IMG/VR virus record: IMGVR_UViG_3300017963_000192
Span: 1-64,000 of that record
Strand: one strand, 5' to 3'
DNA: 64,000 bases
Shown: in pieces, positions 15,664 through 23,771 of the stretch
How the letters are laid out: each line of letters begins with the position of its first letter
Position numbering within the stretch: position 1 is the first letter of the stretch
Made by a program: the position numbers and the translations under genes
Notes under the pieces: model-generated
Database searches by the model: none
Seen by the model: the letters and a program-made list of their open reading frames with translations, nothing else
What the model was told of the DNA's origin: nothing

Positions 15664-16257
15664 TTACCTCGATACTTTATGAATCCTTTTCGGTATATCA
15701 TATAAAGCATCTATTAATTCCTCGTTTGCTATTCTTACTTCATCGGTAAGATTTTCAGCAACTTTGTTATAGTAGTCACTATTTATCCAAGTAATATAAT
15801 CATCATTCCCTCTTTTCTTGTTGCACTTTTTACAAGCAGCAACAAGATTTTCTTCTATTGATAGTCCACCCTCTTCCCATAATATTAAGTGGTCAACAGT
15901 TAAAGGAACATCATCATTTCCACAATATCTACATCTATACCTATCCCTTTTAAAAACTTTCCAGGAGACTCCTTGGTCTATTTGACGAGCGGATTTTCTT
16001 ACAATAATCTTTTTTAGCCCGTTTTCATCTTCTGCTAATACTTCAGTCTCCATAATATCGGTTTGACGTATGAATTTTTTCCATTCCTCTAAATTCATAT
16101 TAAGAATCTTAAATTCATTTCCAGAAGTTTTTTCAAATTCACTTGGGAAGAAACAAAAATAATCACATCCATTTCCTGACCATATTGCCCCAGAAATTTG
16201 AATAGTATTACCTACATCTAAAATATTGATATCATCTAATGTAATTGCTTCATTCAT
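15664..16257 (-). CDS. HNH nuclease with N-terminal extension
   Basis: VFKRDRYRCRYCG..LTVDHL..GG..ENLVAACKKCN. Confidence 0.9.
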   Translation of the reverse strand: MNEAITLDDINILDVGNTIQISGAIWSGNGCDYFCFFPSEFEKTSGNEFKILNMNLEEWKKFIRQTDIMETEVLAEDENGLKKIIVRKSARQIDQGVSWKVFKRDRYRCRYCGNDDVPLTVDHLILWEEGGLSIEENLVAACKKCNKKRGNDDYITWINSDYYNKVAENLTDEVRIANEELIDALYDIPKRIHKVSR

Positions 16258-16761: not shown

Positions 16762-16844
16762 AATAACCCCCTTATGTTAAAAATTAACAATATTCTTAAC
16801 ATATTTAAGTTTGTGTCTCCGACATTGATGTCGGTCAGTTAATG

Positions 16845-17515
16845 CCTGCCCGAAGGGATTCGAACCTACATCTACCAACTTAGCATCCAGCATTATGTTT
16901 CCATAACCACCTTAAAGGCTTGCTGGCTGGACCATATCTTCATCATCACAGATGGAGGGCGTATGGCCTCTACGCATCCCAATTATCGATGGTTTGCTCG
17001 GAATTGTCGTGAAATCTTTTAAAGATTCTTACGATGTTCTCCGAGACAGCCCTCTCCAGTTCTATGGTTCTTTCATTCCTTAATGCATAGCTAAAAGATG
17101 TTCCGCACGATTTAGAACAAGCCCTAAATTTTTTACCAAATCTTGTAGAAAGTTTATTAAAGGGTAATTCAAATAACTTTTTACAATTAGGACATTTTAG
17201 TAATACCATCTTTTTACCTTGTTCTTTACTGCGGAGTTTGTTATGTTCTTTACTATTCATAACTTCAAGATTTTCTATTCTATTATCAAACCTATCTCCA
17301 TTTTTGTGATGCACTATTTCATTAGAATTGAGAAGTCTTTTTAAATGATTTTCAATTATTATTCTATGTAACAAAACATATCCATACTTGCTTGCATATG
17401 GATGATTCTTTACAACAGCATAAAGATAATCACCTTTATTGATAATCTTCTCAATTTTCCACATAGAACGCTCCTTATTTGAAGGATGGTGCTCATCCAC
17501 TTGAGCTACTAGGAC
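16845..17515 (-). tRNA. trnR: tRNA-Arg(UCU) split by a group I intron (exon 1 17515-17482, exon 2 16883-16845); 3' end does not match the 5' end
   Basis: Exon 1 GTCCTAG TA GCTC AAGTGGAT GAGC A CCATC CTT; exon 2 CTAA GTTGG TAGAT GTAGG TTCGAAT CCCTT CGGGCAG G; joined loop CT-TCT-AA; A20. Confidence 0.8.
16884..17481 (-). ncRNA. group I self-splicing intron (598 nt) with HNH ORF in L2
   Basis: P1 CUU/GAG; P2 GTTCTATG/CATAGAAC; P3 GAGGGC/GCCCTC; P4 CTCGGA/TCCGAG; P7 GGCCATA/TATGGTC with J8/7 AAGA; terminal G at 16884. Confidence 0.9.
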
Positions 17516-17776
17516 ATTATTTTCTTCAAATCTTTTTAATTGCTCTAATTTGTTTGCTAAATCTCTTTCCTCCTTAATTTTACGTAATCTATCTATTTTC
17601 GATTTTTTTATTTTATTTAAATAATCTGATTTTAATTTATGATGTTCTGGTAATTTTTGTAACCACAAACTAACAGAACTTTTAGATACATTTAACTCTT
17701 TTGCTATTTTATTAATAGTAAATCCTTGTTTTCTTAAATTAATAGCTTTATTTTTTTCTATTATCTTCTTTTTCAT
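16970..17776 (-). CDS. HTH + HNH homing endonuclease fusion; intron-internal HNH start at 17464 (MWKIEK, 164 aa)
   Basis: N-terminal HTH GFTINKIAKELNVSKSSVSLW; LLHR..VHHKNGDRFDNRIENL; C-terminal CPNC..CSKSC. Confidence 0.85.
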   Translation of the reverse strand: MKKKIIEKNKAINLRKQGFTINKIAKELNVSKSSVSLWLQKLPEHHKLKSDYLNKIKKSKIDRLRKIKEERDLANKLEQLKRFEENNVLVAQVDEHHPSNKERSMWKIEKIINKGDYLYAVVKNHPYASKYGYVLLHRIIIENHLKRLLNSNEIVHHKNGDRFDNRIENLEVMNSKEHNKLRSKEQGKKMVLLKCPNCKKLFELPFNKLSTRFGKKFRACSKSCGTSFSYALRNERTIELERAVSENIVRIFKRFHDNSEQTIDNWDA

Positions 17777-17794
17777 TTATTCCTCCAATAAATG

Positions 17795-17868
17795 TGACTC
17801 CACTGAGAATCGAACTCAGTACCTCGACCTTAAAAGGGTCTTGCTGCTACCAATTGAGCTATGGAGTC
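17795..17868 (-). tRNA. trnK: tRNA-Lys(UUU) copy 1
   Basis: Acceptor GACTCCA/TGGAGTC, loop CTTTTAA, T-arm CTGAG TTCGATT CTCAG. Confidence 0.85.
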
Positions 17869-18756: not shown

Positions 18757-18774
18757 ATCTATAACCTCCTTATG

Positions 18775-18848
18775 TGCGTCCTCTGAGAATCGAACTCAGT
18801 ACCTCGACCTTAAAAGGGTCTTGCTGCTACCAATTGAGCTATGGACGC
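18775..18848 (-). tRNA. trnK: tRNA-Lys(UUU) copy 2 (different acceptor stem)
   Basis: Body identical to copy 1; acceptor GCGTCCA/AGGACGC. Confidence 0.8.
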
Positions 18849-23719: not shown

Positions 23720-23771
23720 AAGAGGCGGAAAGGATCGAAAACCCATTGTACTGCCATTGTACTACGCCTCT
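23720..23771 (-). pseudogene. internally deleted tRNA (Gln-like)
   Basis: Acceptor AGAGGCG/CGCCTCT and D-arm GTAC AATGGCA GTAC intact; anticodon-to-T-arm segment reduced to 19 nt. Confidence 0.65.

What the first reader, a model, noticed from the sequence alone, without database searches (positions are those of the whole stretch)
16970..17794. An HTH gene reads in frame through the tRNA exon into the intron endonuclease; the intron guide sequence doubles as a Shine-Dalgarno
Seen: tRNA exon 1 is translated as VLVAQVDEHHPS (codons 88-99) of a 268-aa HTH-HNH ORF. The IGS (UAAGGAG) is a good SD 6 nt before the internal ATG at 17464, which lies in the P2 stem. The upstream ATG (17776) lies in a perfect hairpin CATTTATT-GGAGG-AATAAATG with its SD in the loop. 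Splicing the mRNA would give a ~133-aa HTH protein with a new C-terminus (hand translation). Established: T4 homing endonuclease genes such as I-TevI use RBS-sequestering hairpins. Inference: splicing or folding could switch between HTH-HNH, HNH alone and HTH alone.
Basis: partly seen in the sequence, partly recalled or inferred. Interest (0 to 1): 0.82.

Follow-up and report, generated by a model that had tools for sequence, protein, structure and literature searches.

The report
Endonuclease gene straddling a phage tRNA exon
A phage tRNA-Arg gene carries a self-splicing intron with a homing-endonuclease gene, and in this phage lineage the endonuclease reading frame starts upstream of the tRNA in a DNA-binding module and runs straight through the tRNA's first half, while the tRNA itself has become a mismatched hybrid of two alleles.

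Summary
Every sequence-level observation is confirmed. On the minus strand a 268-aa ORF (17776..16970) joins an HTH module, a helical linker, 34 nt of tRNA 5' exon, the intron's P1/P2 and an HNH nuclease. ARAGORN and Rfam call neither tRNA nor intron here. Homologues and covariation show a group I intron (17481..16884, 598 nt) between U34 and C35 of a tRNA-Arg(UCU) gene.

This HNH family is large. Its usual product starts exactly at the internal ATG 17464 (164 aa). GGAG ends 5-6 nt upstream of that start and also forms the P1 guide strand; it is kept even in ORF-less relatives.

The HTH-exon-HNH fusion is not a read error. A second lineage (about 50% identical, several variants and samples) keeps the frame despite a nearly randomised linker and an in-frame indel. 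Contiguous HTH-linker-HNH proteins exist elsewhere. Most other loci lack the upstream ORF and have in-frame stops.

Its 3' end belongs to another tRNA-Arg(UCU) allele, with the crossover in the T-loop, so it is probably dead. The start-codon hairpin is weak and not conserved. The three-product switch remains untested: no RNA data were available.

The parts
16970..17776 (-). 268-aa continuous ORF: HTH, helical linker, exon-coded tether, HNH nuclease with zinc ribbon
17774..17794 (-). Hairpin CATTTATT-GGAGG-AATAAATG with the SD in the loop and ATG 17776 in the 3' arm. It begins at the last base of tRNA-Lys.
   Evidence: -5.2 kcal/mol; not conserved in L120.
17516..17776 (-). HTH module (aa 1-44) plus K/E-rich linker (aa 45-87), encoded upstream of the tRNA
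   Evidence: Pfam HTH_23 26.3 bits and HTH_7 26.2 bits. AF2 shows three short helices and one long helix 43-86. 0 in-frame stops against 15/15 in the other frames.
17482..17515 (-). tRNA-Arg(UCU) 5' exon (positions 1-34), translated as aa 88-99
   Evidence: 31 of 34 nt identical to the L120 exon, which belongs to an intact tRNA.
16884..17481 (-). Group I intron, 598 nt, from C after U34 to the terminal G before CTAA
   Evidence: Homology to an ORF-less intron in L001. RNAalifold covariation on 11 cores. P7 counts.
17471..17476 (-). AAGGAG. GGAG (17474-17471) is the 3' strand of P1 (guide sequence, pairs with CUU|C) and has SD sequence and spacing for ATG 17464.
   Evidence: GGAGC is also conserved in the ORF-less L001 introns.
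17462..17469 (-). P2 5' strand GTTCTATG, containing the canonical HNH start codon ATG 17464
   Evidence: P2 partners seen by hand in L121, L122, L131 with changed pairs.
17059..17066 (-). P2 3' strand CATAGAAC, closing the roughly 400-nt ORF-bearing loop
16973..17464 (-). 164-aa HNH endonuclease, the family's canonical product. Its last roughly 30 codons overlap P2', P3, P4-P6. The stop TAG (16972-16970) lies in the conserved GTAGAG of J6/7.
16884..17058 (-). Ribozyme core. P3 17054-17049 with 16960-16955. P4 about 17044-17039 with about 17002-16997. P6 about 16993-16975. P7 16968-16962 with 16936-16930. P8 16953-16941. P9 16927-16887. Terminal G at 16884.
16843..16883 (-). tRNA 3' exon (positions 35 to the 3' end). 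The anticodon loop after splicing is CUUCUAA.
16843..16855 (-). Foreign 3' end (T-stem 3' strand plus acceptor 3' strand). It does not pair with this gene's 5' half. From the T-loop onward it is identical to the intron-less tRNA-Arg(UCU) of L294. The crossover lies within the T-loop, 16866-16856.
16777..16883 (-). Frame continued after splicing: a 34-residue tail of the 133-aa product. Not conserved: the L120 product stops just after its tRNA, at 114 aa.

Best explanation
The locus is a mobile group I intron, similar to the bacterial tRNA introns, inserted between U34 and C35 of a phage tRNA-Arg(UCU) gene. Its P2 loop carries an HNH homing-endonuclease gene. The family's standard product is the 164-aa HNH protein, started at ATG 17464. 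Its SD (GGAG) is the same stretch that forms the 3' strand of P1, and its start codon lies in P2. In the splicing-competent fold both signals are therefore base-paired, and translation and ribozyme folding compete (inferred). In this lineage and in one other (L120), an HTH DNA-binding module with a long helical linker is encoded immediately upstream of the tRNA. It runs in frame through the 5' exon and P1/P2 into the HNH. A ribosome starting at 17776 on unspliced, uncut precursor RNA would therefore make a 268-aa HTH-linker-HNH enzyme. That domain order is the same as in contiguous free-standing relatives, and the exon-coded residues would act as a flexible tether (inferred, not shown). In this window the tRNA is a hybrid of two tRNA-Arg(UCU) alleles joined in the T-loop. 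Its acceptor and T stems are mismatched, so it is probably not a functional tRNA. This is best read as the footprint of recombination or co-conversion during homing between diverged alleles (inferred).
For: Intron and tRNA. A 54-nt core match leads to an ORF-less intron in a tRNA-Arg(UCU) gene of a huge phage; Rfam Intron_gpI scores 40.6 bits there. ARAGORN calls tRNA-Arg(UCU) after in-silico splicing of L120 and L001. 25 of 46 RNAalifold pairs show compensatory changes in P3, P4, P6, P8 and P9, and P7 covaries. Canonical product. More than 55 of about 98 close homologues begin MW at the position of ATG 17464. Most of the best 150 of 1.84 billion representatives align from query residue 105 to their residue 1. 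GGAG ends 5-6 nt before the start in all MW-type loci, and GGAGC is kept in ORF-less introns. Fusion. Frame 0 has no stop against 15/15 (window) and 15/12 (L120) in the other frames, P about 0.002-0.003. The linker is only 23% identical, with a 2-codon indel, yet stays open. The 282-aa fusion is kept in at least 5 variants from several samples. At least 10 contiguous HTH-linker-HNH proteins have no tRNA-like segment. AF2 shows an HTH, a helix at 43-86, a disordered stretch at 87-102 and a confident HNH domain. P0004 has a different N-terminal zinc-ribbon region, also reads through an exon, and has no Met before WKIE. Chimera. ARAGORN does not call the window's spliced tRNA at default settings. 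The acceptor forms 4 of 7 pairs and the T-stem 3 of 5; it is the only one of 11 family members with broken T-stem pairs. The 3' end from the T-loop onward is identical to that of the intact, intron-less tRNA-Arg(UCU) in L294.
Against: There is no transcript, ribosome or protein evidence: no RNA run was listed. Rfam finds no group I intron in the window even at E <= 10. The internal SD and ATG are retained in both fusion lineages, so the HNH does not need the upstream start. Two of the three frames would end the HTH ORF inside the exon, so an in-frame junction has a prior of about 1/3, and the two lineages share it by descent. Six of 8 other loci have an in-frame stop in the exon or the P1 loop and no upstream ORF. 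RNase P cleavage and splicing would sever the long mRNA wherever the tRNA is intact. The parent allele of the 3' end is inferred from one database hit.
Confidence: 0.55

Rival explanations
1. Tolerated read-through. The HTH-linker ORF is an independent small DNA-binding gene, or the remnant of a free-standing endonuclease gene, that happens to have no stop of its own. Only the 164-aa HNH from ATG 17464 matters. The 268-aa chain is rare or irrelevant because splicing, RNase cleavage and P1/P2 folding separate the two parts.
For: The MW start dominates the family. The internal SD/ATG is kept in the window and in L120. The prior for an in-frame junction is about 1/3. Exon plus P1/P2 is 88% identical at the nucleotide level with dN/dS about 1.5, so it is constrained as RNA, not as protein. 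The exon-coded residues are modelled as disordered. Stand-alone or split HTH ORFs exist (L214, L215).
Against: The frame is kept through a linker that has diverged to 23% identity with an in-frame indel, and in at least 5 variants of the second lineage. The domain order equals that of contiguous HTH-linker-HNH proteins. An HTH protein ending in a translated tRNA has no conserved C-terminus: 133 aa here against 114 aa in L120.
Confidence: 0.28
2. Decayed element turned free-standing gene. In this phage both RNA functions are gone: the tRNA is dead and the intron no longer splices. The stretch is simply an HTH-HNH endonuclease gene that has absorbed a tRNA fragment as linker.
For: The tRNA is chimeric and not called by ARAGORN. 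Rfam finds no intron. L300 shows such an end state: the intron lacks P9 and the 3' splice site, there is no internal start, and the ORF starts upstream of the tRNA. The window deviates at 6 of 51 nearly invariant core columns, including two in J3/4.
Against: All core helices P2-P9, the terminal G and the CUU/GAG pairing are intact in the window. Its number of deviations equals that of L131 and is below that of the ORF-less introns. L120 has the same fusion with an intact tRNA and intron.
Confidence: 0.15
3. Assembly or sequencing artefact that removes a stop or shifts the frame.
For: The genome comes from metagenome assemblies. The Logan runs X1 and X2 look like one data set filed twice.
Against: The sequence is identical in two IMG/VR contigs from different samples and in Logan contigs, with no indel listed. 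The same architecture appears in an independent lineage from several sources.
Confidence: 0.02

Closest known systems
Bacterial tRNA group I introns (Azoarcus tRNA-Ile, Anabaena tRNA-Leu(UAA), Agrobacterium tRNA-Arg(CCU); Synechocystis tRNA-fMet intron encoding I-Ssp6803I)
   Same: Insertion in the anticodon loop. A very short exon-guide pairing (CUU/GAG here; 3 bp in Azoarcus, from my own knowledge). A compact core with a GUAGAGACUA-type P7 region (resemblance recalled, not aligned here). The tRNA-fMet intron shows that such introns can carry an endonuclease gene (reference list of PMC3984707).
   Different: Phage-borne. The 2014 review states that all phage introns then known lie in protein-coding genes (PMC3984707). 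The endonuclease is HNH, in the P2 loop, and overlaps the core as far as J6/7. An upstream ORF is fused through the 5' exon.
Phage intron-encoded HNH endonucleases of the I-HmuI type (SPO1/SP82 DNA polymerase introns)
   Same: An HNH catalytic motif combined with separate DNA-binding modules, inside a phage group I intron. I-HmuI (1u3e) is the best Foldseek match.
   Different: The match is weak (E 0.13, TM 0.15-0.22). No PDB sequence relative was found. The DNA-binding HTH is N-terminal here and is encoded outside the intron.
Organellar group I intron ORFs fused in frame to the upstream exon (yeast mitochondrial cob/cox1 introns; my own knowledge)
   Same: The intron ORF is continuous with upstream exon sequence, so translation can enter the intron from outside. 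Splicing and translation are alternatives on one RNA.
   Different: There the exon is protein-coding. Here it is a tRNA half, and the frame begins in a separate DNA-binding ORF upstream of the tRNA.
I-TevI translational control in the T4 td intron, and the c-di-GMP-dependent group I ribozyme of C. difficile
   Same: Start signals sequestered in RNA structure, and an interplay of splicing with RBS availability. The C. difficile case is described in PMC3984707; the I-TevI case is from my own knowledge.
   Different: Here the SD is itself the guide strand of P1 and the AUG is in P2. No ligand or late promoter is known. The hairpin at the upstream start is weak and not conserved.
Contiguous HTH-linker-HNH_3 proteins (P0104, P0132, P0167, P0186, P0188 and others)
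   Same: The same order of HTH, K/R/E-rich linker, HNH_3 and zinc ribbon. 33-43% identity over most of the length.
   Different: They have no tRNA-like segment in the linker. Their HNH cores belong to a sister branch (GRW...YVYEHR) rather than the WKIEK branch.

Membership tests
Group I intron | P1 with a U.G pair at the 5' splice site and a guide sequence just downstream | tested here: met
   CUU|C pairs with GGAG, giving U34.G. The same arrangement is seen in 9 related loci, including ORF-less ones. A competing register UCCUU/AAGGA without U.G also exists.
Group I intron | Conserved core P3-P9 including the P3/P7 pseudoknot, supported by covariation | tested here: met
   25 of 46 RNAalifold pairs have compensatory changes. 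P7 pairs 135/167 are UA:6 and CG:5.
Group I intron | Terminal G at the 3' splice site | tested here: met
   G 16884 precedes CTAA. The equivalent G is present in all aligned relatives.
Group I intron | Match to the Rfam Intron_gpI covariance model at its gathering score | tested here: not met
   No hit in the window at E <= 10. The relative L001 scores 40.6 bits, below the gathering score of 50. The roughly 400-nt ORF in P2 and the divergent core probably explain this.
Group I intron | Self-splicing activity | not testable with these tools
   No RNA run was listed.
tRNA (functional gene) | Cloverleaf with paired acceptor and T stems after intron removal | tested here: not met
   ARAGORN at default settings finds nothing in the window's spliced sequence but calls tRNA-Arg(UCU) in L120 and L001. 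The acceptor forms 4 of 7 pairs and the T-stem 3 of 5.
HNH endonuclease (Pfam HNH_3) | Profile match above the curated cut-off and conserved His/Asn/His motif residues | tested here: met
   39.8 bits against a cut-off of 24.8. H156, H157, N165, N169 and H178 are invariant in the family alignment. PHROG HNH families match down to 7e-17.
Homing endonuclease (functional sense) | Cleaves intron-less alleles and promotes copying of its own gene | not testable with these tools
   Indirect support only. The same intron/HNH occurs in tRNA genes of unrelated phage contexts. The window has a chimeric exon. One variant has a frameshifted copy.
HTH DNA-binding domain (HTH_23/HTH_7) | Profile match above the cut-off and a three-helix fold | tested here: met
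   HTH_23 26.3 bits against 24.6; HTH_7 26.2 against 23.8. AF2 helices at 2-16, 21-28 and 32-39, pLDDT 84-93.

The most novel reading that the evidence does not exclude
The endonuclease gene straddles its own target. The DNA-binding half lies outside the intron, upstream of the tRNA, and the tRNA 5' exon and the ribozyme's guide sequence are read as a peptide tether. RNA fate would then set the protein output. Translation of the unspliced precursor would give the full HTH-HNH enzyme. The nascent or excised intron would give HNH alone. The spliced RNA would give an HTH-only protein that could compete for the target site. Because part of the gene lies outside the intron, homing must co-convert the whole tRNA 5' region, and between diverged alleles this leaves hybrid, dead tRNAs like the one in this window.
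Probability: 0.3. Interest if true: 0.8.

Novelty: new variant of a known kind. Interest (0 to 1): 0.62.

Why it matters
First, it documents a sizeable family of endonuclease-bearing group I introns in phage tRNA genes. This is a niche that a 2014 review described as empty (PMC3984707). Standard tRNA and Rfam scans miss these introns, so phage tRNA sets are under-counted.

Second, one RNA stretch of about 50 nt would serve three roles: tRNA half, ribozyme guide/P1-P2, and coding sequence plus ribosome-binding site. That makes it a compact natural system for studying competition between translation, ribozyme folding and tRNA processing.

Third, the chimeric tRNA is a concrete example of the collateral cost of homing inside a structured RNA gene. 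A conversion tract that ends between the two strands of a helix destroys the helix.

Fourth, a fusion whose DNA-binding module lies outside the intron bears on how free-standing endonuclease genes and introns merge.

Tried and rejected
- ARAGORN with intron search, and Rfam at both gathering and E <= 10 thresholds, found nothing at the locus.
- Megablast against 50,697 phage records gave no match. The distant mode gave only the 54-nt core hit.
- I first placed the 3' splice site after ACATAATG, by resemblance to the T4 td intron end. I rejected that because only the ...GGATG|CTAA junction gives a 7-nt anticodon loop and matches L001 and L120.
- I considered an opal-suppressor reading of the unspliced loop CUUCAAA. 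I rejected it because no matching 3' half follows directly.
- A word-based search with the 87-aa HTH part found nothing.
- The contigs of P0002 and P0004 could not be read. Whether the 101-aa ORF upstream of P0002 is an unfused HTH therefore remains open.
- RNA runs: none was listed. The two DNA runs look like one data set and add little independence.
- A PDB sequence search returned only a spurious zinc-finger match. Foldseek gave only a weak I-HmuI hit.
- Looking for an empty site in relatives via the neighbouring 165-aa ORF found only the same phage.
- The cognate 5' half (CTGCCCG...) of the foreign 3' end is not present in the window.
- My impression that the commonest partner domain of this HTH (L203, L204) is LAGLIDADG-like was not confirmed by Pfam and is dropped.
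- Promoter and terminator scans were at chance level.
Full report
**What is in the sequence.** All features lie on the minus strand. A 268-aa ORF runs from ATG 17776 to TAG 16970. Pfam places HTH_23/HTH_7 at residues 3-40 and HNH_3 at 135-179. Residues 88-99 (VLVAQVDEHHPS) are encoded by 17515..17482. This stretch reads as a tRNA acceptor strand, D-arm and anticodon-stem 5' strand ending in CUU. AAGGAG (17476-17471) lies 6 nt before an internal ATG at 17464. That ATG sits in GTTCTATG (17469-17462), which is perfectly complementary to CATAGAAC (17066-17059) on the far side of the HNH coding body. G+C rises to 0.43-0.49 between 16800 and 17050, against about 0.25 in the ORF body. The hairpin at the upstream start is real but weak: -5.2 kcal/mol, z = -3.1. 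Automated tools, however, call neither a tRNA nor an intron here: ARAGORN with introns allowed, and Rfam at gathering score and at E <= 10, all find nothing.

**Is it really a tRNA with a group I intron?** A distant DNA search gave one hit: 54 nt of the G+C-rich stretch match a 484-kb uncultured phage. There the match lies in an ORF-less insertion inside a tRNA gene, and Rfam's Intron_gpI scores 40.6 bits, E = 5e-8, below the gathering score. Removing that insertion, or the equivalent one in the closer relative L120, gives a sequence that ARAGORN calls tRNA-Arg(UCU), with anticodon loop CUU|CUAA. The window has the same junctions. The 5' splice site follows U34 (17482). The intron is 17481..16884 (598 nt) and ends in G. 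The 3' exon starts with CTAA at 16883.

I aligned eleven cores: the window, L120, six HNH-bearing loci from IMG/VR and three ORF-less introns. RNAalifold predicted P3, P4, P5, P6, P8 and P9, and 25 of 46 pairs showed compensatory changes. For example, the fifth pair of P4 occurs as A-U, G-C, U-A, C-G and U.G. The P7 pseudoknot, counted by hand-defined columns, covaries as well (UA:6 and CG:5 at one pair). P2, which closes the ORF-bearing loop, is present with changed pairs in L121, L122 and L131 (hand reading). I regard the intron as established by comparison. Its catalytic activity remains untested.

**The guide sequence and the SD.** The exon-guide pairing is only three pairs (CUU with GAG, U34.G), extended by the first intron base. 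This holds in all nine related loci. GGAGC is conserved in the three ORF-less introns too, so its primary role is in the RNA. In every locus whose ORF begins MW (or TTG-W), GGAG ends 5-6 nt before the start codon, and the start codon lies in the 5' strand of P2. One correction is needed: the guide is the GAG/GGAG register. In the window the stronger local hairpin UCCUU/AAGGA is a competing register that lacks the U.G pair. In the folded ribozyme both the SD and the AUG would be paired. Ribosome loading and folding should therefore compete, all the more because the ORF runs on through P2', P3 and P4-P6 and stops at the TAG inside the conserved GTAGAG of J6/7. This is inference.

**What the family normally makes.** A word-indexed search gave about 98 close homologues. 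More than 55 begin MWKIEK, exactly at the window's residue 105. About 28 have extensions of 4-13 residues. Eight run back through a tRNA exon. An exhaustive HMMER search of 1.84 billion representatives agrees: most of the best 150 align query residue 105 to their residue 1. The 164-aa HNH protein is thus the canonical product. Its catalytic His/Asn/His residues are invariant.

**Is the fusion an accident?** Only one other lineage has the HTH ORF: L120 (a Logan contig), L222 (a JGI contig) and their cluster mates. There the protein is 282 aa and 50% identical, with the same order of parts and no stop before the exon. Across that cluster the fusion is kept in at least five variants of 96-100% identity from several sources. 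Two have a longer N-terminus. One genome has a frameshift that splits the HNH, as expected for a decaying homing gene.

In both lineages the 104-106 upstream codons have no in-frame stop, against 12-15 in each other frame. Mononucleotide shuffles give P of about 0.002-0.003 for the linker-to-ATG part. The linker is only 23% identical (42% at the nucleotide level) and carries a two-codon indel, yet stays open and K/E-rich. By contrast, exon plus P1/P2 is 88% identical in nucleotides with dN/dS of about 1.5, so it is constrained as RNA.

Many contiguous proteins of 220-260 aa have the same HTH, charged linker, HNH_3 and zinc ribbon, with no tRNA-like segment. An AlphaFold model (mean pLDDT 81.8) shows the HTH, one long helix at 43-86, a disordered stretch at 87-102 that coincides with the exon/P1-coded residues, and a confident HNH domain. 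A further homologue, P0004, has an N-terminal region with CxxC...CxxxC motifs (no Pfam hit). It reads through an exon and has no Met before WKIE, but its DNA could not be read.

Several points weigh against a selected fusion. The internal SD/ATG is kept in both lineages. Two of the three frames would simply end the HTH ORF inside the exon, so the prior for an in-frame junction is about one third, and the two lineages share it by descent. Six of eight other loci have an in-frame stop in the exon or the P1 loop and no upstream ORF. L300, which has no internal start, also has a decayed intron. My reading is that the fusion is real, inherited and probably expressed, but it is lineage-specific and its translation is unproven.

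**The tRNA in this window is a chimera.** After in-silico splicing ARAGORN does not call it at default settings. The 5' acceptor strand GTCCTAG faces CGGGCAG (4 of 7 pairs). The T-stem GTAGG faces CCCTT (3 of 5 pairs). It is the only one of eleven family members with broken T-stem pairs. Up to the T-loop the 3' exon follows the L120 type. From the T-loop to the end (TTCGAATCCCTTCGGGCAGG) it is identical to an intact, intron-less tRNA-Arg(UCU) in L294, whose own 5' half pairs with it perfectly (CTGCCCG acceptor, AGGGG T-stem). The cognate 5' half is not in the window. A crossover within the universally conserved T-loop between two diverged alleles explains this. It is what a homing conversion tract, or any homologous exchange, that ends there would leave. 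The consequence is inferred: no functional tRNA-Arg from this locus, and probably poor RNase P recognition, which would favour survival of the long mRNA.

**The upstream hairpin and the switch.** The hairpin is not conserved. In L120 the HTH start lies 4 nt after the stop of a 68-aa ORF, an arrangement that suggests coupling. The tail added by splicing is not conserved either: 133 aa in the window against 114 aa in L120, which stops right after its tRNA. The idea of three products chosen by RNA fate is mechanistically reasonable, but nothing here tests it. No RNA run was listed. The DNA runs only confirm the assembly.

**Context and literature.** The window equals IMG/VR contig 3300017963_000192 (217.7 kb); a second contig is 99.99% identical. 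No other relative of this phage was found. The flanks of the cassette differ between the window (tRNA-Phe and tRNA-Lys upstream) and L120 (tRNA-Val and a small membrane-like ORF). A 2014 review states that all phage group I introns known then lie in protein-coding genes despite the many phage tRNA genes (PMC3984707). Five full-text searches found no later description of this family, though subscription journals are not covered.

**Verdict.** This is a new variant of a known kind, a mobile group I intron with an HNH gene. It has three unusual traits: a phage tRNA host gene, an endonuclease frame that begins outside the intron and reads through the tRNA exon, and a recombinant dead tRNA.

Noticed in passing
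L001 (LR756508.1) 1975-2250, 2376-2625 and 2774-2998: The 484-kb uncultured phage has two neighbouring tRNA genes, each interrupted by an ORF-less group I intron of this family. The second is tRNA-Arg(UCU). The first looks like tRNA-Lys(UUU) by hand reading. ARAGORN misses both. A HEARO RNA (144 bits) lies just downstream.
   Followed up: partly
window 17794-17868 and 18774-18848 (-): Two copies of tRNA-Lys(UUU), 96% identical over 74 nt, bracket a roughly 0.9-kb block with two ORFs of unknown function and tRNA-Phe. This may be a duplication or an insertion boundary next to the HTH/intron cassette.
   Followed up: no
window 23720-23771 (-): A 52-nt tRNA-like element (Rfam tRNA, 30 bits) that seems to lack an anticodon arm. 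ARAGORN does not call it.
   Followed up: no
window 15664-16257 (-): A second, unrelated HNH endonuclease gene (Pfam HNH, 44 bits) about 600 nt downstream of the tRNA-Arg locus. The tRNA region is rich in nuclease genes.
   Followed up: partly
window 16970-17066 (-), and the same region of L120-L131: The conserved C-terminal protein motifs of the HNH family (AISENIVR ... DNSEQT, and in many members VETIR) are encoded by P3, both strands of P4, and J6/7-P7 of the ribozyme. Protein and RNA constraints overlap there. In many loci the stop codon is the TAG of the conserved GTAGAG.
   Followed up: partly
L300 1201-1900: A relative in which the intron has lost P9 and the 3' splice-site region. The HNH frame has no ATG/GTG/TTG between the tRNA exon and the conserved Trp, and the only start lies 18 codons upstream of the tRNA. 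Seen in two ENA assemblies.
   Followed up: partly
cluster of P0003 (P0268, P0272, P0273): One variant of the L120 lineage has a frameshift inside the HNH. It splits the fusion into a 141-aa and a 140-aa ORF on the same contig, consistent with endonuclease-gene decay.
   Followed up: no
L203, L204, L218 and about 80 other metagenome loci: The same HTH module (...VSKSSVSLW...) most often heads proteins of about 215-230 aa with a different C-terminal domain that Pfam does not assign. Only 5 of 91 loci pair it with an HNH. L215 has the HTH and an HNH-like frame split by a frameshift.
   Followed up: partly
L128 and L130, about 2430-2500: In some family members the ORF starts right after the 5' splice site, upstream of GGAGC, so that the guide sequence is translated (G-A) rather than serving as SD. 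About 28 of 98 homologues have such short extensions.
   Followed up: no
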